Below are positions 3,881-62,840 of a stretch of 64,000 nucleotides of DNA, one piece after another; positions within the stretch are counted from its first letter, which is position 1; each line of letters begins with the position of its first letter. Made by a program: the position numbers and the translations under genes. The notes beneath the pieces were generated by a model, which saw only the letters and a list, made by a program, of their open reading frames with translations, was not told the origin of the DNA and ran no database searches. The stretch is from Saccostrea echinata (Eukaryota): contig NW_026889763.1 in assembly GCF_033153115.1 (NCBI RefSeq), positions 13,144,001 through 13,208,000 on the forward strand. The letters are read 5' to 3'.

Positions 3881-3949
3881 TCCTATAACCTACAAAACTT
3901 GAAGTTTGTTAGCAAGAAAAAAAAACAACCAAAAAACCAATATTATAAA

Positions 3950-43054: not shown

Positions 43055-44513
43055 TTAACTCACATGCGGAGAAAAATATCACTAATTGAAATTTTTATAT
43101 ACACAGAAGACCGACAAGAGTGTGTACTTTTGAATTCATATCTTAGAAAAAAAACTAGAGTGTTCTAGAAAAAAAAGCGTTTGTCGCCTTCAAAAGCAAA
43201 ACCATTAAGAATAAAAAGTGAAAAACATGCTGTTTGTTTGAATATTAATATTATTGTTTTTGCTTGCACCGGAAGAAAAGAGGAATACTCGTGGATAAGA
43301 AAAGAAACACTATATAGACTAATCATCATACGAACTATAGGAATTTAAATAGCCAAATATAAATTAATGTCCTCGGGTCATAACATCCTATATATATATT
43401 ACATGTATATTTATCTTCAAAATCCGAAGTACCTTCCAAAATAAAAAAAAACTAAATTGTCCTCGAAAGAAGGCCAAATTCCAACGTCAAGAGGACTAGA
43501 GTTCTGAATTTTTCAATAGGTCAAACAATTATGAACTAATTTGAAAAGCAAATCAAAGGTCAAGTTCGGTTTCACAAAGTCAGTTTCCTCGACGTTTAAT
43601 ACAAATCATTGAATCAAGCAATATTCATTAATGTATGAGCAATACATCAAAGCACTACCTCTTACAGTTAAAAAGATATTTGATATTTGACAGTCAGACA
43701 GACTGGCACTGGACATAGTGATTTTTAATTGTAAAAGAAATCTGCTTTATAAGCAACATAAAAAGAATCTGAACATCCCAAAATTATTATGTCTTTTTAC
43801 ATGTTTATGCTTATACAGTTAGATCTACATACACATTCTTTTTTTTCTTTTGAGCGCCATCTTTCCCATCATAATTTTAAAGAAAGGAAATCTTGATGAT
43901 CTTGCACGTACATTCATAATGTTTTCATCCAAAAGCTTATACAAATTATAAATCGATAGATCAGTGTACCTCTTGAAAAAAAAATCATTTTATGAATAGC
44001 GCTTGTATAGATTACTCTAAGGTTCTTAATTTCGGAATAATAATAATAAACATAAAAAACTCAATCAAAGAACACAATTGCACATATTAAAAGAGGGTAA
44101 CACTACAAATTAATTCAAACTTTGAAAAATACTTTATGTTAAAAAAGGCAGTGGATACATGTATAAGGGGCATTTGTCATGTTGTAAATTTTGTATTTAC
44201 TGCCACCCGGTAAATTCAAAATTTACAATATGACACATTTATCAATATGTTTTAACCTTGAACTATCTTTTGTCAATAAGTTTTAAAATTTGACCATGTC
44301 TTTAAACTACAAGGGTTGTAAACCAGATTGTTAAATGTAGTAATAAATGAAAAGTACACAATTGACTGCTCTTAAGATTTTTTTCTTAACCATATTTTTG
44401 TACTATAAAGAATAAATAAAAAAAGAGAAAATTTCAATAATGCAGTAAATTTCACAATTGATCAAATGCATTGAATAAATACGGAAATTTTGTAATATAT
44501 AGTATTTAATCAG

Positions 44514-44772
44514 TTAAACTATCTGACAAGATAAAGAGAAAGATAACATTAAATATCAACACATATAGAGAAATAAAAAAGTTTCGTGCACACCCATATT
44601 TGAAGAAGTGTGTGTATGAGGTGTTACTAGATACATTATGGGCTGCGCTTTTTATTTGTGAGAGAACTCTAATTGTTTCAATCAAATTATGCCCAAAAGG
44701 AATCGATTACACAGCATTTGCCGAGTTTTGTTACAAAACACTGAACAAAGTATATCTGGAACAAGAAAATGG
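44514..44772 (+). CDS. Candidate exon of STAND gene 2 (86 aa, 4 Cys, putative ectodomain part)
   Basis: aatcag acceptor just after an in-frame intronic stop; 259 nt open in AT-rich DNA; gtcagt donor, phase 2, matching the phase-2 acceptor at 46880. Confidence 0.55.
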
Positions 44773-44939
44773 GTCAGTATTTTTAAAATTATTTTTACAT
44801 TACTATTGAATCTTAAAGTTCAAAATATGGTACTGAAATGATGAAAATCAAATTATATTCTTTATTAATTATTGAATAATACAAAACTCCATGCCCTATC
44901 AAAGTGAAATCCTTCCCAAACTATGGTCTCAAAGGACCG

Positions 44940-45135
44940 ACGCTAATACCCTGTTCTTTCGGTGATAAGTGGATAAAAGACCTGAATTCCCCTAGATGGT
45001 GAACCGGTCTATCACAGGTTAACTTCCAGAGTAAGACGGTATCCATTAAAAGCTGAACGGACTGACACAATGAAGATAAAGTACTTTGTATAAGGAAATA
45101 ACACTGTATTCATTGCCCAGAGCGGATTTGAATGT
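44940..45135 (-). mobile_element. Decayed CORE-type SINE remnant
   Basis: ggtatccatt..agctg..ggactg..caatg..gataaagt..ttg..caagga resembles the reverse-complemented CORE domain. Confidence 0.4.
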
Positions 45136-46880
45136 AAAACGTTTAAATAACGAACAGAGTTCATTCTAAAAATTCTATAAAAAAGAAAATCGACCTTTCT
45201 GTTACTGGCTAAATGCTTATGATCACTGAGCCATAAGTAATTAACAATAAAAAGTCATGGTAGATAGCAAAACAATTTCTTGGTATTTTGCATTTCTGAA
45301 AAAAACTTTAAATTTTGGAATTAATAAATAAAAAAAATGCTTGCTAGACAGCACAGGAGTTCTTAATCGTAGCGTATCGTTTCTTCTGATTTTCTTTTTG
45401 TTTTAACTAGTTGTTATCCAACACATGGAAGAAATTTTGACAGTACTATGAGAGGGAAATATAGTGATAAATAAATAAAATCTAGATTTTTTTTTTTAAA
45501 AATCTTAAATACTTTCAGAGAAGGTAAACGAATGTCCAAGGACGTTTCAAGGCTGGTCTGAGTCCGCCAAGAATTGTCCTAATCATGATCATTATCACTG
45601 CTTGTTTAACGAGTACTCGGAGACTGTGCAAGGCTGCATAAAACCGATCTTGGTTGAAATAGGTAGGAATAAAGCTAATGTACATAACATACATATCTAT
45701 TTTCTTATTCACTAGTTAAATCACGTCTAAATTTGTGGTACATAAGGTACATAAAGCTAACAATGATTTGCCAATTAGAATAAAAACTTAACAAGAAAAG
45801 CTGTGCATTTTTAACCACGTAGGCAGACTAACAAATTAGAAAATGTTAATCTGTTTATAAACACATTTCTTCTTTAATGAAAGGGAAATGTCCACTTTTC
45901 AACTCAAGAGTTTCAAAATTAGACACAGAGAAATGTCAAAGTGAATGTCCAAGAGAGGTTTACGAATCATTTGAATTATATAAATGTAAGTAGAAAAAAG
46001 CATATAAATTTGAATGAGATAAAAGCAATGTATTTATATTTTAATGGTTTCAAAATACTTCCATATTATTTTAAACCAAGGTCGATAAATGCTACAAATC
46101 ACAGAGAGAAGAAGAGAGATTATTATCAAGTTTTAAATTGATGGAATAAAAATGCTTTGAAACGCGTCATGATATAGATCAATTTCATAATTATATGCAA
46201 TTTCAAAGAAATAGTTACATACTTTAGCAGGAGCTATATCCATTCAGAAATCAGTCTATAACATACAGAGTAAAATTATTTGTATAAATTAAATTTTCAT
46301 AGAAAATTTTGAACACCATGCATAGCATTATACATATTTGAGATCATAGGACATAAAGTTTTGATAGTCACTATCATTAACAGACATGTCAAGATGAATA
46401 AGCTGAAATGAATTTTAATTACATATTGTATTTATAATAAGCTTAAGCTTGTTTGGAGGGAGAACATTCTTTTTTTTCAACTATGCCTGTAGTATACACA
46501 GCATGCTTTGATAAAAATGATTGAACATGTTTCTGGATTAGTTTGTTTTGAATTAGCCATATAAAGAGATTTGTGTGCCACAATAAGAATATTGATGACA
46601 TTGAATTTTAAAACATTTTTTCATTTATGATATTTGAAGATCCAGTGTGCTTTTCAAATGGGAGGTCAGTATCAATTCAACTTCAATACAATCTTATTTT
46701 TTTTTAATTTAATTTAATTTTGTGTACACATTTTACAAATATCATTAAATAGATTACTAGAAAACTTGAATCTTAAATGAGCCTTCTAGGCTTTCGTACG
46801 TATTTCATATTTAGATTTAACATTATTGCAGTCTTCTTTTTTATCTACATATACTTTATGAAATCAAATTGGTTTTTAAG

Positions 46881-47047
46881 GTCGACTTCAGATTTGACAA
46901 CTTCCAATAACTACAACGATAGCATTAGTACGGAAGCAATTACCATAGCTAATGTCCAACATGCTAACAACCAAATCGTTTTGACTGCCGTGGTGTTCAT
47001 GATTTTTCTCTCAGTCTTTGCTATAGTGGCCATTTATAGACTAAGAG
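46881..47047 (+). CDS. Transmembrane exon of STAND gene 2 (S/T stalk + IVLTAVVFMIFLSVFAIVAIY + RLR)
   Basis: ggtttttaag acceptor (alternative ttcag at 46891), AG|gtatgg donor phase 1; 21-residue hydrophobic stretch followed by basic residues; NDS sequon upstream. Confidence 0.72.
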
Positions 47048-47775
47048 GTATGGATTCTTTAATTACCGCCAACTAAAATTTATCATAATTTGAAGGAAAA
47101 TATGTGGGAAAAATTTATATATGCACATTTCTTATCCACTGTATAAATAAATGCGACTTCATTATCAGATATCAATGGTAAAGTTAAAAAGGTTATTCAA
47201 AGAAACAAAGGGTTATTTGCATTTTGGCCAAACCTAATTTTACTTATCTTTAGATCTACATGTCAAGACCAAAAGAGCTATGCTATGATAACGTGTCCGT
47301 CTTCTGTTAAGCTGTTCGTCTGCCTGTCTTTCTGAATACCCTTTTCAAAATTCTACCCCCTTGTGTGTTTATTCCAGTATCAATAGTACTTGGTACACAA
47401 GTGGACAACGCCTCTTTGCAACATTCTATGATAAGTTTTGGGTTTCGATCCACGAAGTTGCCACTGTTGATACACCATGTGTTTGGCATGGATCGCTCTG
47501 GTATACTGATACTAATTACTTCGTTAAAAAAGCATATAAAAGTGATATAATGCTGGAAGAATCAATCTTTTATGCTTGTTGAAAATAAAACGTACAGTGG
47601 TAAAAATTGGTTGACACATGTTACCCAAAATACTGCCCATTGATAGGTTATATTTGCTAACAAGGTCAATATAAAAACCATAGAATTTACAAAATTTAAA
47701 TGAGGAGGTTGTTTATATCCCTTCAACATAAACTTCTCAGTCAGTAGTCTGCCTCGGTTAAAAAGATGTTGCTCT

Positions 47776-48498
47776 GCTACGTTAAGGAAGGCCTGAGTTT
47801 ACATGCTCACTCCTCCATGGCACCTGATCCCACCTCTGATGTTTGGAGGTCTGTGTTTGCTCTGCTTCTATTTTGTATTGTTTAATGGACTTTTGAGCTT
47901 GAATATTGTTCGTTATCTCCATATACTTCATCTGTGATGCAACATATGGGAAGTGTATACCTGATTAACCTCAAAAGTGCAAGGGCATAACCTAGACTGT
48001 TTGAGCTGAAATATGGAATGTCAATTGGATATATCATGTATATTTTGAAAAGTGGTGGGAGCTGATTCTGGTCTGCATATCATTGTTTTTATTCATGACA
48101 GAATTAAGCGAAGTGGAAATTTTGAGCTATTATACACATTTTCGGCAAAATTACAAGTATTACCGAATTAGCTTAAACTAGCTCCCAGCACTTTTTCGGG
48201 AAGCCGAAAATAAATCTTTTTTAATATGTATTATTTTTTTTACAAAACATGCGTATGCCCTTGCGCTAGCCTCATTTTCTATATTCAGCTGAACAATTCT
48301 ATTTTTATGCCAGTCACAGGACACACAGCTGATACGTGCAATATAATTGTTACTGAGAAAGCCACAAACATATCCATTATGGATATCTATATTAGCTTTC
48401 CTACATGTTCACAGTTACTTTGTTACAAAGATTTTTAAAAATAATACGTATTAAGAATGTACTAAGATCGCATTTTCCATTTCCTTCCTTAACGTAGC
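47776..48498. mobile_element. Possible MITE (16-bp TIR) containing a Penelope-like 3' fragment (47800..47930)
   Basis: gctacgttaaggaagg...ccttccttaacgtagc. Confidence 0.45.
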
Positions 48499-48649
48499 TG
48501 AGTGATACTCAAGGCATGCTCTTGAGTATCACTTCAGATTGGAGATATAAAAATGAAATGCAGATGATGGCAGAATATTACTACATGGATAAGGAAAGTT
48601 GATGATGAAAAAGCTGATCATCTCTTCAAATTCAATTGACCTGTTAGTT

Positions 48650-48990
48650 TGCCCTTATCGTCTTTAGTCAGGAAACGGATGTGGCGGACTCTGTGGAGTC
48701 TTCTCTTTCAAATTCACTGGAATAACTATTCGGAGTAGAAATATGAATGGAAGTTACTACTGTTAATTGATTCAACGTCCTTGATACATTTGAATATCGA
48801 GTTGAAGGCAAAAACAAGAGTGTTCTTCTTCTTATGAAGAAGTTTTTCCTTTATTTTCCACTATACAGGAATATAAAAAAGGTCGACTAATAAAGGAGCA
48901 CAATTAGTACCCATCGAAATTCCAACATTTTTTGGAAGACCGGATTTCAAAAGAAATTTAAATGTTGTCAATGAGGAACTCCAGTAAATG
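48650..48990 (-). mobile_element. Penelope-like RT fragment
   Basis: Similar to 57200..57540 (ggagcacaattagtacccatcgaaattccaac = decayed GIPMGTNCAP). Confidence 0.7.
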
Positions 48991-50384
48991 ACTTAAAGAA
49001 ACTTTATGGTTGTCATAATTTGTTTTCTGAGATTCCCCGTCATAAAACAGCACTTAAGCGCAAAAATAATTTGTGATGAATGTGTATTTATTCAACATAG
49101 ATACCAGTCCTTTAAGGTGTACTTTTAGCCGCTTTTCGAAGACTTATTGCAAAGTACCATTCAATACAATGAACCTCGATAATAATTTTTACTTTCCTAA
49201 TAATAATAAAAAAATGTTAATCTTGCTAAAGAAATTCTTGGAGGTCTATTAAAAGTGTTTTTTTTGTAGTTTTTAAGCATAAAAAGGATACAGATCCGGG
49301 TAAGAAGTTTTGTATTTCACAACTTAAATATGTAAAATATTATCATTTAATGTGAATCATTGATAAAATATATCAATCTTATGAGAGAAAATATGTCTGT
49401 GAATAATTAATACCAGTAAAAATGTTTTAGAAAAAAATATTATTTTCACAATGTTAGTTTTTCCTATGCCTTAATTAGTTTGAATTTGATTTAAAACTAC
49501 CTATAACGATCTTCTTGACATGACATCATGACAAGCATTAGAATAATTCTTGCTCTGCTCCTATTTTGTATTGTTTTATGGACTTTTGAGCTTGAATACT
49601 GTTCGTTATCTCCATATATTTCTTCTTAACGTTTGATAGTTCTGTTCATGTAGATATGCATAAAGGTTTTGAAATATCAAATTCCCAAGGACTTCCCAAG
49701 CATCATTAAGGATGAGGTCAAAAATGATTAAGCTTTAGTTCCAAGCGAATTATAAGCTTTATTTCTAAACGTTTAATATCTATTTTCAATAGCATTTAAT
49801 ATATTGTTATTACCCTAATATTTTGCAAAATTAACCTTCATTCTAATAACTTCCTTTAATCACGCTATAATTGAAGTACATACGATACTATATATTGATA
49901 CATTTTTGAATCTATATTTCCATTTGAAGTTATATGAGTTTCGACACCGTCAAATACAACCCCAGTTCATTTACAGATAACTTAGCTCTTTCTCGCCAAA
50001 TATGTCCACAATTATCATTACCAATAAATACGTAAAATTCATTGCTTCAAATCAAATTTTTAATTGATCATCCAAAGTCCATTTTTTTCGTTCTTTACAC
50101 CAAATAACACTTTTCTTTCTGCTTCATTGTCAGATGACCATCTTTTGAAGATGTCTATTGAAGCCTGAGTGAAAAAATTTCGCCATACAATTCTTTAGTA
50201 AAAAGTAGCATCCTTTGCCTCATTTAAAGAGCTGGTATTTTCATCCAATGTCCCCCTCCCAATGTTTTTTTTTTTTAAATTGTGAAACTTGCAACTTACT
50301 CTTCCATCATTTTCCCCTTGAGATTATTGCATCAATCTGCTACAAACGTTACATAATTAGGGACATTTTTTATCTTGTTTAATG

Positions 50385-50575
50385 ATATATGGAGATAACT
50401 AACAGCAATCAAGCTCAAAGTCCATTAAACAATACAAATCGGGAGTAGAGAAAACAGATTAACTTGTTTAGCAATAGTTTGCCTCGTTTTAGAAATTGTT
50501 CGTACGTAGAGCATACTCTTGCATATCAAGTCAACTGTCAGACATAAACCCCATATGCAGGTGATAAGGGTATAA
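50385..50575 (-). mobile_element. Penelope-like 3' fragment
   Basis: atatatggagataac..caagctcaaagtccattaaacaatacaaa; gtttgcctcgttttagaaattgttcgtacgtagagcat. Confidence 0.7.
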
Positions 50576-50973
50576 GATGCGTTTAGGACGTACAATTATG
50601 AAACGTGCTAAAAAAAAATGTATTCTCCTCTATTTGTTTACATGAAACGTGCTTCTACTAGACTTATTCTCCTCTATTTGTTTATATTTATAGATGGTGA
50701 ATCAGTAAAACCTTTGAATGAATATGGTAAGAATTGTATCATCCGGTTATAAATCATATACTTTGGGGAGGGGGGAACTAATAGAGTTCGAATCAGAATT
50801 TTCCATACTACTCTTTTTTTTTACCAGTTAAGTGTTTCTGATACCTTTTTTCACCCAAAATCTTGATATATCGTTATATTAAAAAATATACCGGTACAAG
50901 ATATCTTTTATTTGATTATATTTGCATTAAGAAATTGTTGAAAAATTCTTACTGAGTCAATTTTTTTCCCCAG

Positions 50974-51039
50974 AATTCAGCAGAATAAACGATATGACTG
51001 TTTATGACCCAGCTGTACTGGATAATTTCCTTTCAACAG
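50974..51039 (+). CDS. 66-nt phase-1 linker exon of STAND gene 2 (FSRINDMTVYDPAVLDNFLST)
   Basis: tttttttccccag acceptor, CAG|gtatgt donor, symmetric phase 1; joins the TM exon to the NTPase exon in frame. Confidence 0.72.
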
Positions 51040-51158
51040 GTATGTAAAAAATTGAATTGTTAAACTTTATAATCCTCGAATCAGGCCATGCAACTACCTA
51101 ATTGAATTTTGTACGATTTCCTAGTCCTACGGACGACGCTGCTTTTTTCATGTTATAT

Positions 51159-51588
51159 CCCTAACAAAAAAATACTATAGTTAACTATAGCTTACCATAG
51201 TTGACTATAGTTTACTATTGTTAACTATAGTAAAGCAAAGTGTCAAAGTGATTACTATAGTAAATCAAAGTTTTTAAAGTGATCACTATAGTGTCATAGT
51301 AATCACCATAGTACATCAAAGTTTTCATAGTGATCACTATAGTAAATCAAAGTTTTAATAGTGATCACTATAGTAAATCAAAGTTTTCATAGTTATCACT
51401 ATAGTAAATCAAAGTGTCAAAGTTGTCACTATAGTAAATCAAAGTGTCAAAGTTATCACTATAGTAAATCAAAGTGTCAAAGTTATCACTATAGTAAATC
51501 AAAGTTTTTATAGTGTCAAAGTTATCACTATAATTAACTATAGTAAAATATAGTAAACTATAGTTAACTATAGTATTTTTTGTTAGGG
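51159..51588. mobile_element. Foldback-like MITE with CCC..GGG termini and an internal 30-bp tandem array (CMC/EnSpm-like)
   Basis: ccctaacaaaaaaatactatagttaactatag vs ctatagttaactatagtattttttgttaggg; AT on both flanks; unit aagttatcactatagtaaatcaaagtgtca repeated ~8 times. Confidence 0.8.
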
Positions 51589-52099
51589 ATATAACATTAT
51601 GTTAAGCAAATAAATGAAAGGTTTGAAATTAATACTACAGTATACACTGTATCTTCCATATTTCATACTTATAGTCATCTTTATATATTTTATATAATGT
51701 GTTATCATATCGATATGATGTCGATGCTTATCAAATTTATTATCTGGATTCTTAATCTGGTTTAAAATTTTTTATGTACATGTATCAATTCCTTTTTCGA
51801 AAAGTTTCATTGAACGCTTAAAATATTTAGCAAGCGTAAAAATAATTTTATCTCATCTCACACAGAAAAAGTGGCAAAGCAATGTATCTTTGCACTATTT
51901 TTACTGTAATGAATGACAAAAATCTGTAAAAGAAAAAAAAAAAGTCAGTAGTGATGAATGACTATATAATAAAACAATAACCCGCAATCTTTTCATGTAA
52001 GTGCTTAAATTAAGAGCAGGCTTTTTGATATCATCAGTCATCTACAAAATTATTTGACGTAAAAATCAGTCGGGTACTACTTACAAATACTTAATTGTT

Positions 52100-52550
52100 G
52101 AAAAGATTCTGGAGTTCCTCAATGACAATATCTATGTAGTCTTTGGTGACCAGGTCTTCCAGCAGTGTTGGAATTCCGATTAGCACTATTGTGCTCCTTT
52201 ATAAGCCGGTTTGATTTAATTATTCCCATGAAGCAGAATTTATTCAAAACATTTTCATGAGAAAAAAGCTGTTGATGTGGCCTTCAACTCAATATTCAGA
52301 TATATCAATTAACCATAATCACTTTTATTTCATATCTAGACTCTTTATATCCCAAAGAAGTCGAAATAAAAGATACTACAGAGTTTGTCACATATGTTTC
52401 AAATTCGGTTGTTATAAATAATGATCAATAAATAAACCATATAAAATTATGGCCAACAATCAACTAAACTGTATGACAAACGGGATGACTTCAGGTTTTT
52501 TTCGTCATCCTCCCTTATTTACATATACATGTAAGTAGCAATATTCCACG
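52100..52550 (+). mobile_element. Penelope-like RT fragment
   Basis: LEFL.DNIYVVFGDQVFQQ, KLYDKRDDF. Confidence 0.78.
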
Positions 52551-54640
52551 AAGATACATCTCATTTAAACTGTCTGCTAGAAATAAAGAGATTTTTTTTT
52601 ATATACCGTAAGTTGTGAATGGTACTTGTTTGTATTTATTCCTTAGAAGTACCATATATCTGTAAGTACTAGAAATGATAAATGCTATCCATGATGTAGT
52701 TGAAAGATACACATAAGCGATTTTTGATACAATTTATTTTTCTATAGGTACATATGCAACTGTAATAGAGGAATTACTGACATAAAATAAAAGTTTCATA
52801 ATGTGAATTCTCGCCTGACCTTTCAGGAGAACGTTCCTATTTCTCCGTATGAAAGACATAGGATCCAAGTATTTTATACATGTATTACCTCTATTACAAT
52901 CTATTGTAATTTCAGGATACAACACACATCTTTGGTAGCACTACTAGCTACGAGAACAGCAGTTCTGACTAAGAAAATCAAATGTCAAGGAAGGGGGTCC
53001 TAAAGGTCACATATAATTGATAATTAAGTGTTTGCTTTAAGCAATTTTAGTATTTTTACCAAGATAAAGAGATCATCCGCCTTATATGAAGTGTCACAAT
53101 TTTGATTTATGCATGATGTTTCATTATTGACCCAAACTACCGTGGCACAGGATCTCCTTTTTTTAAGGTAATATCCAAAAAAACATGACTTTTACTTAAT
53201 TAATGCTAAGGGCTAAGCAAAGGAACAGTCAATACCCGCGTTAAACGCCTTACTTTTGACGCGTCACATCGGGCCTTATCAAGATGTCAATGCGAGTTTC
53301 AAACCCTTAGTGCCTATCTGTGCCTTTATTGTTTTATACATCTGTAAGACCATGGATATACATGTACTAAGACTCTTTATATGAATATTGGAAGGAGCTG
53401 TTGAAACTCTTCTTGAACAACTTAATCTTAATTCAATCAAAAAATCCCTTTGGCATAATCAACATTTGAAATACATCTTTAATAGTTCATTAGAAAACTT
53501 CCATGACGTCATCCATTGTTATTAGTTACCGATTCAACCATCACTAGTTGGATATTTAAAGATCAAACTGGCCATCAGTTGGATTTTTAAATATCCAACT
53601 GCCTATCGGTGGATATCTAAGTATCCAACTGTGCAAACAAACATAATTAGGCAATGGACAAAAGATATTAAAAGAGTTTAAAATGTGATTCCAATGCACA
53701 TAAAAATAATTACTCCGAATTTGTAAGACTATTACAATTTATGTCCATGAATTATTCACTTTGCATTTTTTACACTATTAGAATCGTGTTAAAGATATAC
53801 TTCCAATGCACACAAAAATTATAATTCCTCCGAATTTTGCGCACTGTTAGACTCTTGTCGTAAATAAAATATCCAATATTTATCCGATGGTATTTTAATA
53901 CAATGTTTCAGGTCTGAAATTTTGAAAGCATCATTTTTTGACACGCTTATAAATACATTTTCACCTTGAACCTTAAACCACGTCACTTCCTATTGCTGAA
54001 TATTATTTCAGGGGTCCGTTATCAGCAAATCCTCTCAGATTTGTCGAGGTACATCTTTGTTCTCATACTTTTCCAGCGTAGTTCCCAAATCAATTTAATA
54101 ATTTGACAGCACATCTATTTGTTGTCATTTTATTGTAGAACTTGATATGGAATGTTTTTAAAGCAGTTTCCGCATAATACAGACAATCTTTTCACCTATT
54201 TTAGCAGTACTAGAAGTATTGTCCGAATGGAACTCCATAAGATTCCAAGACTTTTCCTCAGAAAAAATCATCATCTTATACGTAATGACAGATTTCCAAC
54301 TTTTTATCAAAATTCTGTAGTTTTCTTCTGCTTTCAGGTCAAAAATATTCAAAACAATATCTGATCCTCTCTAAATTTACCTTGAATTTAAAACTATTCT
54401 TTTTCTGATTTCATGACTGTTCAGTACAATGGAAAGGTTTGAAATGACATTTGAGCTGATTAGCACCATGCAGTTTCATGCTCACTTATCCATGAATAAA
54501 AGAGGTGTTCGATTAGGCTATTGTATGTTGTCACTATTGGATATTTAAATGGGCTAGATCCCAGTGTATTGCAGCAAAGTTGGATATATGAATGGATAAA
54601 TGTTTCTTTGAGGTCCAAAGTAGGGAAGTTTTTTAAGTAA

Positions 54641-54764
54641 GATAAATAACTCGATATATAGTGTTAAAAAGTTTAGAAAAAACATCCCCTCCTCGGGCTT
54701 TCGGCCCTCGCAGGGAATGTTTTCTCTAAACTATTCAACACCAATGTCCATCTCATTATTTATC
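54641..54764. repeat. Decayed ~125-bp palindrome
   Basis: gataaataa...gtttagaaaaaacatcccct-cctcgggctttcggccctcg-cagggaatgttttctctaaac...ttatttatc. Confidence 0.7.
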
Positions 54765-55426
54765 CATTACATAGTTCAATCCCGGGGGTTCGTGTTTTTT
54801 ATCCTGTTCAGTTTAACATCAACTGATTATTAAGCAGTGTACATCAACAATTTACTGTAATTTCTGTTTTATTATGTGTAAATATATTTTTTTTTCATAA
54901 AAAAGTATTTTGGTATGATTTGACTAAATATCATCTCTTTGGGCAGAAACAGATCTATTTCTTTCCATTCCTCTATAACTATCCTGGTCATATAAAACAT
55001 ACTTTTATCCCAGATCCTTGATAAGAAACTATGCATAACTAATGTACAAATGTAATAGTAAACAATATTGGGAGCAGTTTATATTAATAAATGGTTTATG
55101 AGACGAAACATATTGTCATTCTATATATATTGTCGTTGATGTCAATATGTACCAACCCTAACTGCATAAAATATCGTCAATCGGTATATATTTTAAATGG
55201 CTTCAAAATTTTGTTTGTACATTTTATTGCTGGCGACGAGATGCGCCTACCCATGCTGCACAAAGCGCTTCCCAGTTTAAGGGTTGCAATTAAGAATGAA
55301 TGATAAAAATGATATCGAAATTTATAAATTAAATTTTCATGAGATTGCAGGTTAAGAATGAACCCAATGTTTTTATATGCTCATTTTTCAGTTCTTCAAC
55401 TCCAGTGCATATGCAATCAAACGCTA

Positions 55427-56535
55427 TTAGCTCACCTAAGTCAAAGGCTCAAGTGATCTTTTCTAAATGAAATATGTTAGTAGTCTGTCATCGTCGTAAC
55501 CTTTGTTTCAAATTTTGATTTCTCCAGAACCACTAGACCAATTTTGGTCATAATTGACAATAAGCATCCCTTGATAAAAAGAATTTAGATTATATTAGAT
55601 AAAGGGTCATACCTTCGTTAAAGCGGAGATAATAAATAAAACTGTTGTTAAGTCTTTAAAAATCTAAAGAACCACCAGGTCGTAAAAGATAAATTTCAAA
55701 TTAAAAGCTTTCTGACATGATAATTGATATTAAAATGGAAATATCCTTAGAGAGTGAATCTTCAAGAGCATGCTCTACGTATGAACAATTTCTTAAACGA
55801 GGTAAATTATTGACAAACAAGTTGATGAAACAAGAATATCAGCAGTCTCGTTTAAAGTCATCATTTCGTAAGTTCTATGGTCGATACAATGACCTTGTCA
55901 GCAAATACAATTTATCATTGAGTCAAATGCTGACTGACGTTTTTCATACTAATTGTTAGGCCATTATTTACACACTGCATTGTCGACGAATTTTTCCGTT
56001 ATTTCCCGATCATGACAAGGAGCGGGTGTGACCGGTCGGCAGGGGATGCTCACTCCTCCATGGCACCTGATCCCACCTCTGATGTTTAGAGGTCCGTGTT
56101 TGCTCTGCTCCTATTTTGTATTGTTTAATGGACTTTTGAGCTTGAATACTGTTCGTTATCTCCATATATTTCAATAATGTTTAAAACTTGACCCCAGGGT
56201 AGGATGATACCACTTTAGGGAGTCAAAGTGTACACGTGAATTTTTTAGGGAAATGTTTTAAATCTATCTCTCAAAAATAGGAGGGCCATAATTAGTAAGC
56301 CAATAAGGGGTGCATATACAAAATTGCTGTACTCAATCCTGACCCTTTGGATTAAATGGTGCCAGAGCTTACATAGGGAATTGATAGGAACTCCAAAAAA
56401 AAGGCAATGAAGGGCCATGATTAGTCGTATCATTATGCAAGCGTGCTCAGGTAGGAGAGATTCAAATTTATTTACATTAATGTCCGAGGGGGGGGGGGGC
56501 ACATCAGGAAATCAAACTTTTTCATGTGTATATAT
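55427..56535 (+). mobile_element. HINE/Helentron-like copy interrupted by a Penelope-like fragment
   Basis: ttagctcacctaagtcaaaggctcaagtga start; satellite-like units on both sides of 55760..56173. Confidence 0.6.
55760..56173 (+). mobile_element. Penelope-like 3' fragment (young)
   Basis: RACSTYEQFLKRGKLLTNKLMKQEYQQSRLKSSFRKFYGRY...HTNC* plus the conserved 3' UTR. Confidence 0.88.
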
Positions 56536-58301
56536 TAGGGATGGCATTCGAATACAGAATTGCCAATCGGTTAACCGCAAGACGTTCCGACCGATTAGTC
56601 GAATAAGCGTATGAAAAATTCTTGATATAGTTAGACTCGAATAAGTAAGATGAAATATATGGAGATAACGAACAGTATTCAAGCTCAAAAATCCACTAAA
56701 TATTACAAAAATAGGAGCAGAGCAAGCACAGTCCTCTTAAACATCAGAGGTTGTATCAGGTGCCATGGAGGAGTGAGCATCCCCTGCCGACCAGTCACAC
56801 CCGCCGTATACTCCTTGTCATGATCGGGAAATAGCGGAAAAATCCGTCGACAATTCAGTGTGTAAATAATGGCCTAACAATTAGTATGAAAAAGTCAGTC
56901 AGCAATTGACTCAATGATAAATTGTATTTGCTGACAAGGTCATTGTATCGACCATTGTACTTACGAAATTTTGACTTTAAACGAGACAGCTGATATTCTT
57001 GTTTCATCAACTTGTTTGTCAATAATTTACCTCGTTTTAGATATTGTACATACGTAGAGCATGCTCTTGGGTATCGAATCAACTGAGAGATATAAACCCC
57101 ATATGCGGGTCATGAAGGTATATTGCTGCATAAGTAAAGGAAGTTGACGATTGAAAAGTTAAAGTCATCACGTTTATCATAAAGCTTGGTTGTTAGATTA
57201 CCATTAACGTCGTTTTCAAGTTAAATATCCAATTATGAAACAGATGTGTCACACTCTAAGTATCTTTTATCTCGAGCTCCCTGGGATATATCGTATCGAC
57301 ATAAGAATGGAAATAACCATTGTTAATTGAGAATACGTCTTATATCAAAATGTCGAGTTGAAGGCCACAGCAAGTGTTTTCTTCTATTCACGTATAAGAT
57401 TTTGGACAAATTCTGCTTCATATGAATGCTAAAAAGGTCTGCTAATAATGGGGCGCAATTGGTACCCCTGGGATTCCAATAGATTGTTGGAAGACCTGGT
57501 CTCCCAAAACCACATAGATATTGTCAATCAGAAATTCAAGCTCTAAGCTTTAAGACTATAAAGATGTTCATGTAGTAATTTTATGCTTATATTTATATAT
57601 GATCAGAATACTACATATATTGTATTTCAATTTTAATGGGGGAAAAAAAGGGGAAAAAATTAAGAAACCCATGAAACATCCTGAGGTCGCAGATGCATTA
57701 AAAAAATTTCAGAAAAGATGTCATTCTGCATTTTCACCATAATCAAAATTTAGTCTGAATTATCGCTTATCTTACGATGTTTGTTTTAGAATATAATTTG
57801 ATAGGTAACTGGAAAGGATAGAAGAGATTGGGTACACATTATAATCAATTCAATTCAATTAATTCTCACATTTGTAAAACAACATAGAGAAAATACAACA
57901 ACAATATCAATCAAAAGGTGCAAAAGGTACATGATGCAAAAGTGTACAGTTAACTTTAACCTGGAAGGGTAACAAAGTTAACGATCATTTAATTAAAATC
58001 ATTAAAGAAACACGGGACAGGGTGGGTAACGACATGTGTTTAAACAGAAATACGACTGGAAAAGTGACCAATTACCCCCACGCGATGTCAATCTGGAGAG
58101 CCTTAATAATCTCCGAATCAGCTTAAATAGATAAGTGAACATGCTTACATTTCAGAGTATTTTATTTGTATTTTTTAAATTGAATTTTCAGGAAATTGTA
58201 TTATATTAATTATTTTCCGACTAACCGATTACAGATTTTCTAGCCGATTACCATCGTTCCGACCGAGTAACCGGTTAACCGATTACAAATTGTCATCCCT
58301 A
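56536..58301. mobile_element. hAT-type MITE with perfect 8-bp TSD, carrying a Penelope-like insertion
   Basis: gtatatat|tagggatggcatt...aattgtcatcccta|gtatatat; aaccg/cggtt subterminal motifs. Confidence 0.9.
56651..57541 (-). mobile_element. Penelope-like RT 3' half
   Basis: GIP.GTNCAPLLADLF, KLYDKRDDFNF, IRYPRACSTY, same 3' UTR. Confidence 0.88.
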
Positions 58302-58308
58302 GTATATA

Positions 58309-59152
58309 TACTGAAACGCAAAAGAAACGCAACAAGCCGTAATCTACAAATATTTGAATTTTTCATCAATTGATTCTGAAAAATGAATACAGTAATGTAA
58401 AACTCGATTTAAAAACATCAGAAATTTGATAAAAATGTTTAATGATTATCTTTTAACTTTAGAAAGTAACCCATGACTGTTAACCCCCACCCCCACCCCA
58501 CCCCCAGCCCCACCCCCAACCCGGCCATTCAATTACAGCGTGCAAGACTGTCATGCACAACAGTTGCAGCTTGATTTCTACGATATAATAGGTTCATCAT
58601 TCTCAAGTCTAAGCGAAAGAAATACTCTTTGCCATTTTAAAATGCCTGTTTTTCAGATGATGAGTGGAATTTTCTCTAGCCAAGCGCAGTTAAGTAACCC
58701 TTGGACTTCCGGTCCAAAGGAGTGTCATTCACGCTAATGATACGTAAAAGGCTGTTGAGGCGTGATGTTGTTCATATTTGCATTTGCAACTCTCAATCAC
58801 CTTTATTTTGAGATTTTCCAGCTAGCGCAATGGAAATGCGTACTTAAGACATTTTCAGGAAGCCTTGGCATCGCTTACGGAACAGAAAGGAGAGTTTATT
58901 TTCATACCATTGCTGCATTGCTTATAATGAGCAGATACAAATCCTTAAAACCCCTATTATTACCAAATGTTATATGAATCATGCAATTTGTGATTTCTGA
59001 TAGGCGGTTAACTTCCGGTAATGGTATGAAAATCATAAATTACCAATATTTACAAAGTTGAAGATATCCTTACTTGTTAGATACAAAATTATGTCCGATT
59101 TGTAATATTTCCCTCTTAAAATAGGATGTTGCGTTTCTTTTGCGTTTCAGTA
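58309..59152. mobile_element. Non-autonomous Tc1-like element
   Basis: tactgaaacgcaaaagaaacgcaaca...tgttgcgtttcttttgcgtttcagta perfect TIRs in TA context. Confidence 0.88.
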
Positions 59153-59159
59153 TATATAT

Positions 59160-59216
<57 letters not shown>
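59151..59216. repeat. (TA)n(GA)n microsatellite
   Basis: Direct read. Confidence 0.95.
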
Positions 59217-59218
<2 letters not shown>

Positions 59219-59324
59219 CATCTTCAAGACTATTACCTTCTCTATCAATGGCAAGGTAATGATCATCCATATTTTTATGCAGATATCCTATGGTAGTACG
59301 ATTCAAATTTACTCAAACCATAGC

Positions 59325-59630
59325 ACCGTCACGGTAGCTCAGTCGATAGAGCGCTCGCTCCGTGATCGGAAGGTCATGAATTCGAATCTTGGTCGCTACT
59401 GACCTTAGTCGATAAAAAGTAAGGTATATGTTACTATGTAGCAACTGTTCCTTCGCCAGGCACTCGGCACTTTAAAGTGAAAGTTGTAGGTCTTTCGGAT
59501 GAGGCTCCGTGTCACTGTAGGCGTAAGCACGAATAAGAACTCTGACTGCTCAATGGCCCTGAGTGCCGAGTAAAGGTCTAAATTTGAAGCCCTATGGTGA
59601 TGTCTCTGTATGACTGAAAAATTGTCAGAA
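59325..59630 (+). mobile_element. tRNA-derived SINE
   Basis: ggtagctcagtcgatagagcg A box, aattcgaatct B box; reverse complement of the 25102..25455 family. Confidence 0.88.
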
Positions 59631-59649
59631 AAAATGTTTTTAGCTCATA

Positions 59650-59990
59650 TCCAAACTTCACCTCGTGCCATCCTACTCACACCAAAAGGATATCCCTTAC
59701 AACCTAACCAGAAGAATTTGTACGATTGTGAAAGATACAGATACTAGAAATCGAAGGTTGACAGAGCTTAAAACATTTCTTCTTGCACAACATTATCCAG
59801 GAAATCTTATCCTTTCTGCCATAGAAGAATCAAAGAAAAGCCCGCAACATATCATAGAAAAGACTAGAAAAAAACAAAGACCCCCTCTTAATCCCTTTTG
59901 AGACAACATATAATCCAAAATATATTAACATATTTCAAGAGGCGAAAAAGAACTTTACAATTATTGAACGAGATAATTATCTTCAGCAAG
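59650..59990 (+). mobile_element. Fragment of a second Penelope-like family (thumb/linker region)
   Basis: KDIPYNLTRRICTIV..RNRRLTELKTFLLAQHYP.NLI, followed by a PF..TYNP-like linker. Confidence 0.7.
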
Positions 59991-60043
59991 TACATACTAT
60001 GATGTCATGGATTAATTCCTTCACTGTAGATTAGATAAAAAAA

Positions 60044-60100
60044 ATAGATAGATAGATAGATAGATTAGATAGATAGATAGAGAGATAGAGAGATAGATAG
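60044..60100. repeat. (GATA)n microsatellite
   Basis: Direct read. Confidence 0.95.
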
Positions 60101-60249
60101 CACTAGAAAACCAACAATACTGTATATCCTATGTGTCGGATGTATTAGATACAATTAAAGGTAGCAGTCAGTTTTGCATAGTAGATAATCTTCCTTTTGT
60201 GCCATATTGTTTTTTTTTTTTAAAAAGTTAAAAAAAAAATTATTTTCAG

Positions 60250-61475
60250 TGCATGTTAGTTTGGAGAACCTTATTCCATATGGTGATCAGACGATAGCAA
60301 ATATGGCGATTCGTCTTTATCATTCCAAATTAATTGTTTTTTGGGGAGATACTGGAAGTGGTAAATTATCTGTAGCGGCTCAAGTGTTTCATTTCTTCGT
60401 TAAAACATGGAAAAATCCCTTTGAGTGTCATGTTCTTGAGGATATTTTCAATGTGGAACAGTACATGATCAAGGGAAAAAATAATTTATTTCTTATCCGT
60501 GGAGTCATTAAGCGCTGGTATAGACATCAACATGTTTATGCAAAAATTGAAGAAATAAAGAAACTATCTAGCTTGCTTTCATATATGAGTAACGTTTATG
60601 TAATTGTTCTATCTGACTATGTAAGTATCTTTCAATGGAAAACAGAATCTGCTCATGAAGAAAAAATTGGATATTTTCATATCAAATGTACAAAGCCGGA
60701 TTTTTTTTGCAAGCTTTCAAAGCGGTGCATAACTTCTGAGAGCAAGACAGTTGAAATTAGTCAGGAATTCGCAAAGGGAATCATCAACTCGAAATTCAAT
60801 TTTGGTGGACCCGAGATTGCCACTCTGATGCTGAAAAACCAGAATCTTTGGAAGGAAGGATCAACGTTTGTTAAAGCACCATATCATGTCCTGGCCAAAG
60901 ATTTGAAAAGAATGTTAAAATCTTATGAAGAAAGTGAGAGGTCAAAGTTCACGGTTTTGGTCTTCCTACTAACAAACAGCGGTAAAATTGATACAAAATC
61001 TTTTGACAGAGATAAAATGAAAAAGCTTGCCGAGGATTTCCGTTCTTTTACAAATGGATTAGATAAGGTTGACAAAATATGCAAAGAACTGTTGTATGAA
61101 TATCTTGAGCGAGGGGAGGACGAATCATCTTACAGAATCCAACACGAAATTTTACTGAGATGCATTTTTGTTGTTGCAGCAGAGACTGTCTTGCCAAAAC
61201 TGATTGATCTAGCTAGTCCAGAGGTTCTGTTAGATTGTATCAGACCTGACAATAGGAAAATTTTAACAGAAATAAAGTTAATTTCAAAGCTCAAGATAAC
61301 TGACCAACAACATTTGAGTGATATGACTATAAATGTTTCTGTGATTCACTATTGGAAAATATGTAAAAGATTCTTAATGCTTGTAAATGATGGGTTTCCT
61401 AATGTATTGTGGCATAATTTTTTCGACGATAGGGACTTCACAGAGGCCTTTTCTGTTATGCAGACATCAAAATAA
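60250..61475 (+). CDS. Terminal exon of STAND NTPase gene 2 (nSTAND3-like, degenerate catalytic motifs)
   Basis: Intact ~408-codon ORF; ttattttcag acceptor phase 1; VFWGDTGSGKLS, LFLIRG at the Walker B position, FGGPEI, YRIQHEIL; collinear similarity to 18327..19495; AATAAA at ~61588. Confidence 0.85.
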
Positions 61476-62840
61476 TTTTTAAAAAATCATTTCTAATTGA
61501 AAACATCCGGATATTTAACTGCCAGTGAAAGGTATTTGACGATTAAAATAAGAATTTTAATGGGGGTAATTTCATATCTATTAGACAAATAAAGAACTAT
61601 TCCAATTCCTGATAAAATGATGGTTTGATATTATAAAATGTAATATATGAGGTTTACCATCCGGACCTTGTCTGGTATGGTTGAATGGGTCTAAAGGCCA
61701 ATGTTAACCAATACATGAACAGGTCCGTATAGTGTCTAGTACGTGTAGATCGCATTCGTCTCAATAATTATTATAAAATAATAAGTATTGAATAATCAGG
61801 AATTTACATTATTTATTTTTCCAACTGTAGGTTTTGTCTCCATCAAACATAATCATTCATGATATCTTAAGTTGCAACATATCATAATTATATTTCACAG
61901 TTTAACAACTGTTTAACAAGGTAGAAAATAATATTATAAATCATTAAAAAAAAGTTAACACTCTTCGATATGTTTACAACGACACATGTTTTAAAAGGCG
62001 CGATTTTATTTGTTGATGAAATTTTGGAAAAAAAGACAAATCTTCTTCCTTGTATTTTGTACCGAAGCACCGTGGTTGGGCATCAGAAATCAAAACTGCA
62101 TGATACTTTTGTTAATTTCTTTCTTTCTTTGGTCGAACATTGTTTGTGAAAAAGAAATCCAATGCACATTTAAAATAAACCTATAGTTAAGATGAAATAA
62201 ATATTCAAATGATATAGTCTTGTTCGTCTATTAAAATATAAACTCAACCACAAACTTATTGCAATAGATATTATTTTGTTTTCAATTCTATTTAAAAAAA
62301 AAATATAGTAAAAAGTGTAGAAAAATCTAAAAAGGTTAAGGACTTGGAATAATTTAAGAACCTCTAGAAACACTAAAAAAAAATGATTATACCCTGTATA
62401 TCCATTTAGATTTTTCCTAAGATGATTATAATTGCCAAGTTTACATAAAGTTGTGATTTTAAAGTTTATTATTATTTAATAATTTATTCCATCTCATAGA
62501 TAATGTCAATATGGCATATTTTTTTAGTAGAGTGTAATATTTGCTTCGTAATTTTTGGAAATCTTATTTTGGACAATAATGGTCAATAGATACAGACTTT
62601 AGGGAAAGAAAAAAAAAAACATTTCCTTTAGATAATGATTTCGTAAACAAAACATTTCATTTAGTATCTTAATACTTAATGCAATGAAAAATAAATACAA
62701 TATAGCCAAAGTTTGACTTAAATTCTTAAACTATCCAAAGTAATTTCTGTTTACATGTATAAAAATGTACAATTACATCTTAAAATGTCATTCAATAAAT
62801 TTTCACTTCCTCTATCTTTCAAATAGAAAAGTGTTATAAT

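What the first reader, a model, noticed from the sequence alone, without database searches (positions are those of the whole stretch)
44514..61475. Single-pass membrane receptor with a cytoplasmic STAND (nSTAND3-like) NTPase module
Seen: exons 44514..44772, 46881..47047, 50974..51039 and 60250..61475 have canonical AG/GT ends and matching phases (2,1,1). They splice into one open frame: Cys-containing segment, S/T stalk with an NDS sequon, 21-aa TM helix, RLR, 22-aa linker, then the P-loop/GxP/WHD module and stop. Known: animal STANDs (NLR, Apaf-1) are typically soluble, with an N-terminal effector and C-terminal repeat sensor; nSTAND3 was defined from bacterial conflict systems. Inference: a type-I receptor that senses outside the cell and uses the STAND module as an intracellular signalling or oligomerisation scaffold, a candidate lineage-specific immune receptor class invisible to ORF-only annotation.
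Basis: partly seen in the sequence, partly recalled or inferred. Interest (0 to 1): 0.9.

Follow-up and report, generated by a model that had tools for sequence, protein, structure and literature searches.

The report
Oyster membrane-anchored STAND NTPase receptor gene
This stretch of the black-lip rock oyster genome most likely encodes a single-pass membrane protein with an eight-cysteine outer domain and an NLR-like (nSTAND3) NTPase module inside the cell; it belongs to a large oyster gene family that is already in public databases but has never been studied experimentally.

Summary

**Gene model**
- The NTPase exon (60250-61475) is a real 408-codon open exon.
- The TM exon (46881-47047) has the most hydrophobic 19-residue stretch of all 2,212 six-frame fragments in the window.
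- Three exons were missed: 45519-45662, 45884-45985 and a 25-nt micro-exon at 46640-46664. They encode a conserved eight-cysteine ectodomain.
- The corrected seven-exon model is 577 codons long, with canonical splice sites throughout.

**Family**
- The window is Saccostrea echinata.
- RefSeq models, and one assembled contig that is probably a transcript, join the same ectodomain, a TM helix and Pfam nSTAND3. These come from Ostrea, Crassostrea/Magallana and Saccostrea, including this species.
- Kaur et al. 2021 described related receptor-like STAND architectures in Crassostrea.
- The predicted fold matches MalT, NRC1/2, NLRC4 and Apaf-1.

**Weak points**
- No RNA junction evidence exists for this locus, and no public protein matches it.
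- Both Walker motifs are eroded in this copy.
- There is no signal peptide, so it is not a classical type-I protein.

First-stage notes of this scan flag similar receptor-STAND genes elsewhere in this genome. Verdict: a new, probably catalytically dead member of a known but uncharacterised kind.

The parts
44769..44772 (+). Start codon ATG plus one base (G), then a GT donor at 44773 (intron phase 1).
Evidence: This is the first in-frame ATG after a stop 8 codons upstream. ATG+N|GT is conserved in the duplicated cassette upstream of the window.
45519..45662 (+). Ectodomain exon A (48 codons, Cys 1-4, YHC motif), phase 1 to 1.
   Evidence: The ectodomain profile hits it at E = 1e-12. Exon and splice sites are clearly better conserved than the flanking intron in the tandem copy. 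Frame check.
45884..45985 (+). Ectodomain exon B (34 codons, Cys 5-7), phase 1 to 1, with a T|GTAAGT donor.
   Evidence: The ectodomain profile hits it at E = 2e-9. It is conserved with its splice sites in the tandem copy. pN/pS for exons A+B between the two copies is 0.53.
46640..46664 (+). 25-nt micro-exon (Y-P-V-C-F-S-N-G) carrying the eighth, family-invariant cysteine. Phase 1 in, phase 2 out.
   Evidence: It is conserved with AG and GTCAGT signals in the tandem copy. It yields YKYPVC, matching the family motif YKYxxC. It makes exon B in frame with the 46881 acceptor.
46881..47047 (+). Ser/Thr stalk with NDS sequon, 21-residue TM helix and RLR stop-transfer residues. Phase 2 in, phase 1 out.
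   Evidence: Hydrophobicity ranks 1 of 2,212 fragments. Paralogs use a phase-2 acceptor (tgtag|A) at the equivalent place.
50974..51039 (+). Candidate 22-codon juxtamembrane linker exon, phase 1 to 1. Plausible but unverified; skipping it also keeps the frame.
   Evidence: It has the best combined splice signals of 395 candidates. Three linker exons of about 22-27 codons exist in the paralog at C14:11.65 Mb. No sequence conservation was found.
60250..61475 (+). Terminal exon: nSTAND3-like STAND module (NBD, helical domain, winged helix, C-terminal helices) and the stop codon. Walker A reads GDTGSGKL. The Walker B position reads RG instead of DD or xD.
   Evidence: AlphaFold2 model pLDDT 84. 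STAND fold matches. Acceptor homologous to the RefSeq-used acceptor of the paralog. Low-depth exact contigs at 60917-61295 in three of four runs.
18327..19495 (+). Tandem paralog ('gene 1'): NTPase exon of XP_061177724.1, 24% identical to the exon at 60250. Its own ectodomain/TM cassette lies upstream of the window, at C14:13124881-13136355.

Best explanation
The locus is a seven-exon gene of about 577 codons from an oyster-expanded family of membrane-anchored STAND NTPases.

Architecture, shown by sequence and homology:
- An N-terminal domain of about 90 residues with eight cysteines, specific to molluscs.
- A Ser/Thr stalk with an N-glycosylation sequon.
- One TM helix followed by basic residues.
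- A short linker.
- An nSTAND3-type module (nucleotide-binding domain, helical domain, winged helix) with no C-terminal repeats and no recognisable effector domain.

Inferred:
- The positive-inside rule puts the Cys-rich domain outside the cell and the STAND module in the cytoplasm. With no signal peptide, the protein would insert as an N-out signal-anchor (type III) protein.
- By analogy with other STAND proteins and with death-receptor-type clustering, a ligand or surface that binds the ectodomains would bring the cytoplasmic modules together. These would then form or seed an oligomeric platform, perhaps recruiting soluble nSTAND3 paralogs that carry HEPN or ankyrin domains.
- In this copy the Walker A Ser/Thr is Leu and the Walker B acidic pair is Arg-Gly, while the GxP motif, the winged-helix His and the fold are kept. 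It is therefore more likely a nucleotide-independent scaffold, regulator or decoy than an ATP-driven switch.
For: - **Exon structure:** open in frame with canonical sites.
- **Ectodomain exons:** found by a profile built from homologs and conserved above intron level in the tandem copy.
- **All eight family-invariant cysteines present**.
- **TM helix:** hydrophobicity rank 1 of 2,212.
- **Same architecture in public proteins:** XP_048728652/3 and XP_048780149 (O. edulis), XP_022301281 (C. virginica), XP_065939718 (M. gigas), XP_062598348 (S. cucullata), XP_061175930 (S. echinata), plus the 514-aa P0025 on a 2.9-kb assembled contig.
- **Pfam nSTAND3 in relatives:** 36-104 bits.
- **Co-linearity in this genome:** ectodomain exons lie upstream, on the same strand, of NTPase exons at about ten further loci on C14, C30, C11, C29 and C1.
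- **Phase-1 junction:** verified in the RefSeq-backed S. echinata paralog and at the homologous acceptor of gene 1.
- **Fold:** MalT Z 11.5, NRC1 10.4, NRC2 10.3, NLRC4 9.5, Apaf-1 9.2, each over 260-306 residues. Foldseek top hits are NLRP14, CED-4, NRC1/2, Apaf-1, SAMD9 and Avs5.
- **Published precedent:** Kaur et al. 2021 propose external triggering for receptor-like Crassostrea proteins.
Against: - No read or contig joins any two exons of this locus. The only coverage is low-depth contigs inside 60743-61295, from runs whose RNA label is a guess.
- No public protein contains this NTPase exon, although neighbouring family members of the same species are in RefSeq.
- RefSeq models the tandem paralog as a soluble 414-aa protein with a different first exon.
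- Pfam nSTAND3 is below threshold for this copy (17.3 versus 27.2 bits).
- Both Walker motifs are eroded, and the family's PIWV motif reads PILV.
- The 5' cassette is a recent duplicate (68-82% nucleotide identity, introns included), whereas the two NTPase exons share only 24% of residues. The present pairing is therefore a mosaic that may or may not be spliced together.
- Function, topology and oligomerisation are all inferred.
Confidence: 0.6

Rival explanations
1. There are two separate products. One is a short ectodomain + TM protein ending in another 3' exon. The other is a soluble NTPase transcribed from a promoter or first exon within the 13-kb intron. The two parts are then neighbours, not one receptor.
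For: - O. edulis LOC125683239 has a 225-aa isoform with only ectodomain + TM.
- RefSeq gives the tandem paralog a soluble 414-aa product whose first exon lies in a repeat 600 bp upstream of the NTPase exon.
- The 5' cassette and the NTPase exon have different duplication ages.
- There is no junction evidence.
Against: - The NTPase exon begins at a strong acceptor. Its first in-frame ATG is 18 codons in, and an in-frame stop lies 15 codons upstream of the acceptor.
- The repeat that supplies gene 1's first exon is in the opposite orientation here.
- The exon phases are compatible throughout.
- Full-length joined models are the rule in relatives.
Confidence: 0.2
2. It is a decaying or recently dead copy: a mosaic made by duplicating a 5' cassette next to an old, diverged NTPase exon, no longer under selection and not expressed as a protein.
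For: - It is not in public protein sets.
- Walker A and B are eroded, and the ectodomain has W>L in a conserved motif.
- Pfam is sub-threshold.
- A nearby ectodomain-A copy at C14:13238589 has stops.
- Coverage in the only available runs is very low.
Against: - All seven exons are open and all 12 splice dinucleotides are canonical.
- A 408-codon open frame in DNA of about 30% G+C is very unlikely without selection or very recent origin.
- Structural motifs (GxP, winged-helix His) are intact and the fold is confident.
- All eight cysteines are kept.
- pN/pS of the ectodomain exons is 0.53.
Confidence: 0.15
3. The C-terminal module is not a STAND NTPase but another AAA+-like ATPase with a winged helix (ORC/Cdc6-like) or a generic P-loop protein.
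For: ORC/Cdc6 chains also appear among the Foldseek and VIA hits. A sequence search of PDB finds only generic P-loop matches.
Against: - STAND proteins give the best and longest structural alignments, with MalT Z 11.5 over 300 residues across 1-407.
- Relatives pass the Pfam nSTAND3 threshold by a wide margin.
- nSTAND3 is the NTPase of bacterial Avs5, which is also among the fold hits.
- NSF-type AAA+ matches cover only the first ~210 residues.
Confidence: 0.03

Closest known systems
Uncharacterised oyster RefSeq proteins with eight-Cys ectodomain + TM + nSTAND3, e.g. XP_061175930.1 (S. echinata LOC133184871), XP_048780149.2 and XP_048728652.1 (O. edulis), XP_022301281.1 (C. virginica)
   Same: Same order of parts: N-terminus without signal peptide, eight conserved cysteines with the YHC and YKYxxC motifs, stalk, one TM helix plus basic residues, short linker, and a ~400-residue nSTAND3 module ending the protein. 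Same exon logic and the same phase-1 junction into a single large NTPase exon.
   Different: The NTPase exon here is only 22-25% identical to any of them. It falls below the Pfam threshold and has lost the Walker A Ser/Thr and the Walker B acidic residues. No public protein model exists for it.
Receptor-like TRADD-N proteins of Crassostrea (Kaur, Iyer, Burroughs, Aravind 2021, eLife 10:e70394, PMC8195603)
   Same: [quoted passage not shown] The authors propose triggering by external stimuli.
   Different: Those proteins have a DED and a TRADD-N domain after the TM helix. Here the linker is about 25 residues, and no DED/TRADD-N match appears in this gene or its close relatives. I could not test whether the ectodomain is the same one.
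Bacterial Avs5 (SIR2-STAND, AVAST type 5), the characterised nSTAND3 (PF20720) proteins
   Same: Same Pfam NTPase family in relatives. Avs5 structures are among the fold hits.
   Different: Avs5 is soluble, with an N-terminal SIR2 effector and C-terminal repeat sensors. Here there is no effector or repeat domain, and the candidate sensor is extracellular.
Animal and plant NLR/apoptosome STANDs (Apaf-1, CED-4, NLRC4, NRC1/2) and MalT
   Same: Predicted NBD-helical-winged-helix fold (Z 9-11.5). GxP motif and a conserved His in the winged helix at the place of the MHD motif.
   Different: No NACHT or NB-ARC Pfam match, no LRR/WD40/TPR sensor, no CARD/PYD/TIR effector, and the protein is membrane-anchored.

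Membership tests
STAND class of P-loop NTPases | Walker A motif GxxxxGK[ST] | tested here: inconclusive
   This copy reads G-D-T-G-S-G-K-L: the Gly and Lys are kept but Ser/Thr is replaced by Leu. Paralogs read GSGK[TS].
STAND class of P-loop NTPases | Walker B: hydrophobic strand ending in Asp/Glu | tested here: not met
   The aligned position reads L-F-L-I-R-G, whereas relatives have LLQD, ILDD or LLDD. The motif is met in relatives and lost in this copy.
STAND class of P-loop NTPases | Nucleotide-binding domain followed by a helical domain and a winged helix, structurally closest to known STANDs | tested here: met
   AlphaFold2 model pLDDT 84, pTM 0.84. VIA-align: MalT Z 11.5 (300 residues aligned), NRC1 NB-ARC 10.4, NLRC4 9.5, Apaf-1 9.2, STAND-TPR 6mfv 8.9. 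Foldseek probabilities are 0.97-1.0 for NLRP14, CED-4, NRC, Apaf-1 and SAMD9, though TM-scores are only 0.23-0.39.
STAND class of P-loop NTPases | GxP motif after the NTPase core and a conserved His in the winged helix (MHD-like position) | tested here: met
   G-G-P-E-I and I-Q-H-E-I are present. H298 is invariant among the seven paralogs and G185 and P210 are nearly invariant among 40 sequences; G185 lies in the G-G-P-E-I motif, while P210 lies about 23 residues downstream of it. That these correspond to the canonical motifs is my inference from position.
Pfam PF20720 nSTAND3 | Score at or above the gathering threshold (27.2 bits) | tested here: not met
   This exon scores 17.3 bits, E = 0.004, covering profile positions 14-74 only. 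Paralogs and orthologs pass: gene 1 27.3, L004 28.4, P0001 38.9, P0048 76.5, P0028 104.5. Membership therefore rests on homology to members.
NLR (NACHT or NB-ARC with LRR) | NACHT/NB-ARC domain and C-terminal LRR sensor | tested here: not met
   There is no NACHT, NB-ARC or LRR Pfam match, and the protein ends about 90 residues after the winged helix.
Crassostrea receptor-like TRADD-N expansion (Kaur et al. 2021) | DED and NCOA6-type TRADD-N domains between the TM helix and the variable C-terminus | tested here: not met
   The linker from TM to NTPase is about 25 residues. Neither this gene nor eight full-length relatives give a DED or TRADD-N Pfam hit.
Type I membrane receptor | Cleavable N-terminal signal peptide, N-terminus outside | tested here: not met
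   The predicted N-terminus is M-E-K-V-N-E-C-P with no hydrophobic stretch, and there is an in-frame stop 8 codons upstream of the ATG. Most relatives start the same way. The N-out orientation is inferred only from the basic residues after the TM helix, the cysteines and the sequon. No signal-peptide or topology predictor was available.
Oyster eight-Cys ectodomain + TM + nSTAND3 family | Eight conserved cysteines, YHC motif, single TM helix plus basic residues, and a terminal nSTAND3-type exon on the same strand | tested here: met
   Joining in one mRNA was not tested for this locus.

The most novel reading that the evidence does not exclude
Oysters have a whole class of transmembrane STAND receptors. 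In this reading an extracellular eight-Cys domain, with no detectable relative among solved structures, senses a microbe, a foreign cell or a self/non-self cue. It then directly nucleates a cytoplasmic STAND oligomer at the membrane, with no adaptor domain in between. Copies with dead Walker motifs, such as this one, would act as nucleotide-independent decoys or brakes that co-assemble with active paralogs.
Probability: 0.25. Interest if true: 0.75.

Novelty: new member of a known kind. Interest (0 to 1): 0.45.

Why it matters
STAND/NLR proteins are usually thought of as cytosolic sensors. A large, fast-evolving oyster family that ties an extracellular cysteine-rich domain straight to a STAND module would be a different wiring of innate immunity. 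Oysters have no adaptive immunity and face mass-mortality diseases, so this is of practical interest too.

The family is in databases only as 'uncharacterized protein', and nobody has tested its topology, ligand or output. This particular locus adds three things:
- a corrected gene model for what appears to be an unannotated member;
- an example of cassette shuffling, in which a recently duplicated 5' ectodomain cassette sits in front of an old, diverged NTPase exon;
- a natural variant with both Walker motifs eroded.

It is not a new class, and its own expression is unproven.

Tried and rejected
- **Word-indexed protein search with the NTPase exon:** no hit. Relatives were found only by the exhaustive profile search.
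- **RNA evidence:** only four small runs with a guessed RNA label hold parts of the exon. Laid on 55900-61800 they give low-depth contigs inside 60743-61295, no joint or loose end at 60250, and very high depth on intronic repeats. This neither supports nor refutes splicing.
- **Alternative acceptor at 46892:** I first proposed it (phase 1, giving YKY) to link ectodomain exon B to the TM exon.
rejected.
- **Sequence search of PDB with the family profile:** only generic P-loop hits.
- **Ectodomain:** no Pfam family and no PDB fold match. Foldseek gave E >= 1.4. The VIA wide search was taken over by the TM helix, Z <= 3.5, so the ectodomain fold was barely tested. The language-model atlas gave only mollusc clusters.
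- **Search for an ectodomain cassette within 40 kb upstream of the paralog at C14:13357755:** none. A later genome scan found one 63 kb upstream.
- **Homolog of the 50974-51039 exon in paralogs or public proteins:** none.
- **Tools unavailable:** I therefore could not fetch the O. edulis loci or the ectodomain exons of XP_061175930.
- **Joined model:** All searches were exon by exon, by reference. The exons were chained only inside a script to check phases, printing eight residues at each end.

Full report
**What the window is.** The NTPase open frame at 18293-19495 is 100% identical over 389 residues to XP_061177724.1 of Saccostrea echinata. The window is G000:C14:13144001-13208000 of a 923-Mb assembly with about 30-35% G+C.

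**Checking the observation.**
- The last exon (60250-61475) is a 408-codon open frame ending in a stop.
- The TM exon (46881-47047) encodes a Ser/Thr stalk with an NDS sequon, a 21-residue hydrophobic helix and RLR. Its best 19-residue window (Kyte-Doolittle 2.96) ranks first among all 2,212 six-frame fragments of the window.
I built a profile from the N-terminal parts of eleven homologous public proteins. It ignores 44514-44772 and instead hits two + strand frames at 45509-45712 (E = 1e-12) and 45850-45990 (E = 2e-9).
- What is conserved there is ATG plus one base followed by a GT donor: ours ATGG|GTCAGT, the copy ATGA|GTAAGT.

**The corrected model.** It has seven coding exons:
1. 44769-44772 (ATG+G)
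2. 45519-45662 (ectodomain A)
3. 45884-45985 (ectodomain B)
4. 46640-46664 (micro-exon)
5. 46881-47047 (stalk and TM)
6. 50974-51039 (linker)
7. 60250-61475 (NTPase)

All acceptors are AG and all donors GT. The phases are 1, 1, 1, 2, 1, 1. The model has 577 codons and a single stop, at the end.

- The 25-nt micro-exon was found because the intron block around it is unusually well conserved (82%) between the two tandem copies. Both copies keep AG|AT...AG|GTCAGT.
- The micro-exon supplies the eighth cysteine in the motif YKYPVC (family consensus YKYxxC). That cysteine is invariant in 18 full-length relatives.
- Before finding it I had proposed an acceptor at 46892. That idea is withdrawn.
- Exon 50974-51039 has no detectable homolog. 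It is nonetheless the only one of 395 open phase-1/phase-1 candidates in the 13-kb intron with splice signals as good as its own, by a crude score.
- Linker exons of about 22-27 codons exist in a paralog. Skipping this exon would also keep the frame.
- The acceptor at 60250 (ttttcag|TG) is homologous to the acceptor of the paralog at 18327 (gtcag|TG). RefSeq uses that one in phase 1.

**The NTPase module.**
- Pfam gives only a sub-threshold nSTAND3 match for this exon: 17.3 bits against a cut-off of 27.2.
- The exon nevertheless belongs to a family with at least 75 matches in this genome and 799 representatives in public proteins.
- Members pass the nSTAND3 threshold, with 27-104 bits.
- Some members are long and carry HEPN_DZIP3 and ankyrin repeats.
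- An AlphaFold2 model built on a 40-sequence alignment is confident: pLDDT 84, pTM 0.84.
- Its best structural matches are STAND proteins: MalT Z 11.5, NRC1 NB-ARC 10.4, NRC2 10.3, NLRC4 9.5, Apaf-1 9.2, NLRP9 9.2, SAMD9 9.1 and a STAND-TPR protein 8.9. Each aligns 260-320 residues.
- NSF-type AAA+ matches stop at about residue 210.
- Foldseek agrees, with NLRP14, CED-4, NRC, Apaf-1, SAMD9, Avs5 and Avs4, though ORC/Cdc6 is mixed in and TM-scores are low at 0.23-0.39.
- nSTAND3 is the NTPase of bacterial Avs5.
- In this copy the Walker A reads GDTGSGKL, with Leu in place of Ser/Thr. The Walker B position reads RG where relatives have DD or xD.
- The GxP motif, the winged-helix His and two near-invariant residues are kept.

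**Is the membrane cassette really part of the same gene?** For this locus this is inferred, not shown.

Evidence for:
- RefSeq proteins of O. edulis, C. virginica, M. gigas, S. cucullata and S. echinata itself (XP_061175930.1) have exactly this order of parts. So does a 514-aa protein on a 2.9-kb assembled contig, which I take to be a transcript because the genes of this family have introns.
- For XP_061175930.1 I verified on the genome that the TM exon ends in phase 1 (AAAC|GTAAGT) and joins the NTPase exon (tttcag|AA) to give the annotated Gln.
- All exons of O. edulis XP_048728652 map in order onto the S. echinata paralog at C14:11.65 Mb. Five of its six junctions have canonical phase-1 sites.
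- Ectodomain exons lie upstream and on the same strand of NTPase exons at about ten further loci.

Evidence against:
- The only runs holding this exon are four small ones with a guessed RNA label. They give exact low-depth contigs within 60917-61295 and about 92%-identical ones in one run, with nothing at the junction.
- No public protein contains this exon.
- RefSeq models the tandem paralog as a soluble 414-aa protein. Its 25-residue first exon lies in a repeated element.
- The 5' cassette (41578-46757) is 68-82% identical in nucleotides, introns included, to the cassette upstream of gene 1. The two NTPase exons share only 24% of residues. The locus is therefore a mosaic of a young 5' part and an old 3' part.

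**Topology and ectodomain.**
- The protein starts M-E-K-V-N-E-C-P with no hydrophobic leader and an in-frame stop just upstream. Most relatives start the same way. It is therefore not a classical type-I protein.
- An N-out orientation is inferred from the basic residues after the helix, the eight cysteines and the sequon.
- The ectodomain of a relative folds confidently, at about pLDDT 90 over residues 1-96.
- It has no Pfam family and no match in PDB in the searches I could run. Its look-alikes in the atlas are all molluscan, including clusters with nSTAND3 and nSTAND3 + ankyrin.
- Between the two tandem copies, the ectodomain exons have pN/pS 0.53.

**Comparison with what is known.**
- Kaur et al. 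2021 (PMC8195603) describe in Crassostrea an expansion of about 50 proteins. Each has a cysteine-rich extracellular domain, a TM helix, DED and TRADD-N, and variable C-termini that include STAND NTPases. The authors suggest triggering by external stimuli.
- The present family lacks DED/TRADD-N and wires the TM helix almost directly to the STAND module.
- I found no paper describing that variant. The proteins are in RefSeq as 'uncharacterized' with nSTAND3 assigned.
- First-stage notes of this scan flag similar receptor-STAND genes on other pieces of this genome. These are unverified and are not independent evidence.

**Verdict.** The locus is a real, probably intact but catalytically eroded and unannotated member of a known, uncharacterised oyster family of membrane-anchored nSTAND3 proteins. 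One exon was wrong and three were missed. 'Type I' and 'invisible new class' are overstated.

Noticed in passing
window 41578-46757 versus C14:13121895-13128322 (upstream of the window): A 5.2-kb block (promoter region, ATG exon, both ectodomain exons, the micro-exon and the introns between them) is duplicated in tandem at 68-82% nucleotide identity. The NTPase exons downstream of the two copies are only 24% identical in protein. This looks like shuffling of a 5' receptor cassette between old, diverged NTPase exons.
   Followed up: partly
window 17643-17718 and 18327-19495; C14:13124881-13136355: RefSeq XP_061177724.1 (gene 1) starts in a 25-codon exon that lies in a repeated element; related copies sit at window 59435-59593 and upstream of the window. 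A complete in-frame ATG, ectodomain A, ectodomain B, micro-exon and TM cassette lies 26-37 kb upstream on the same strand. The RefSeq model may therefore be a truncated or alternative isoform of a membrane receptor.
   Followed up: partly
window 60743-61271: In run X3 the contigs over the NTPase exon differ from the assembly at 16-18 of ~206-232 positions (about 92% identity). Runs X1, X2 and X4 give exact or near-exact contigs. No close paralog exists in the genome, so this may be a strongly divergent allele.
   Followed up: no
window 55760-57540 and 59361-59626: Intronic repeats with copies near gene 1 reach depths in the hundreds to thousands in the four runs. Many contigs run on into unlike sequence at 56167-56173 and 59593, which suggests the ends of a high-copy mobile element.
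   Followed up: no
window 59143-59196: A short stretch of about 50 bases aligns at every 2-base offset, and on both strands, to longer arrays at C14:13127742-13127947 and C14:13132124-13132224. This looks like a simple dinucleotide repeat shared by the introns of both tandem genes.
   Followed up: no
window 30394-32641 (- strand): Fragments of a non-LTR retrotransposon: reverse transcriptase (RVT_1, E = 4e-16) and zf-RVT (E = 5e-8), split over several open frames.
   Followed up: partly
window 3431-7435 (- strand): A run of seven open frames of 123-231 codons on the minus strand in a G+C-richer stretch (40%). The three I scanned have no Pfam match. Possibly a degraded mobile element or a multi-exon gene.
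   Followed up: partly
C14:13238589-13238702 (about 30 kb beyond the window end): Another ectodomain-A-like exon (53% identity) with two in-frame stops, likely a dead cassette copy in the same cluster.
   Followed up: no
C11:3400710-3482884 and C29:23801555-23857432: Tandem arrays of three ectodomain + NTPase gene units each. On C29 the ectodomain exon lies only 2.5-5.7 kb upstream of the NTPase exon.
   Followed up: no
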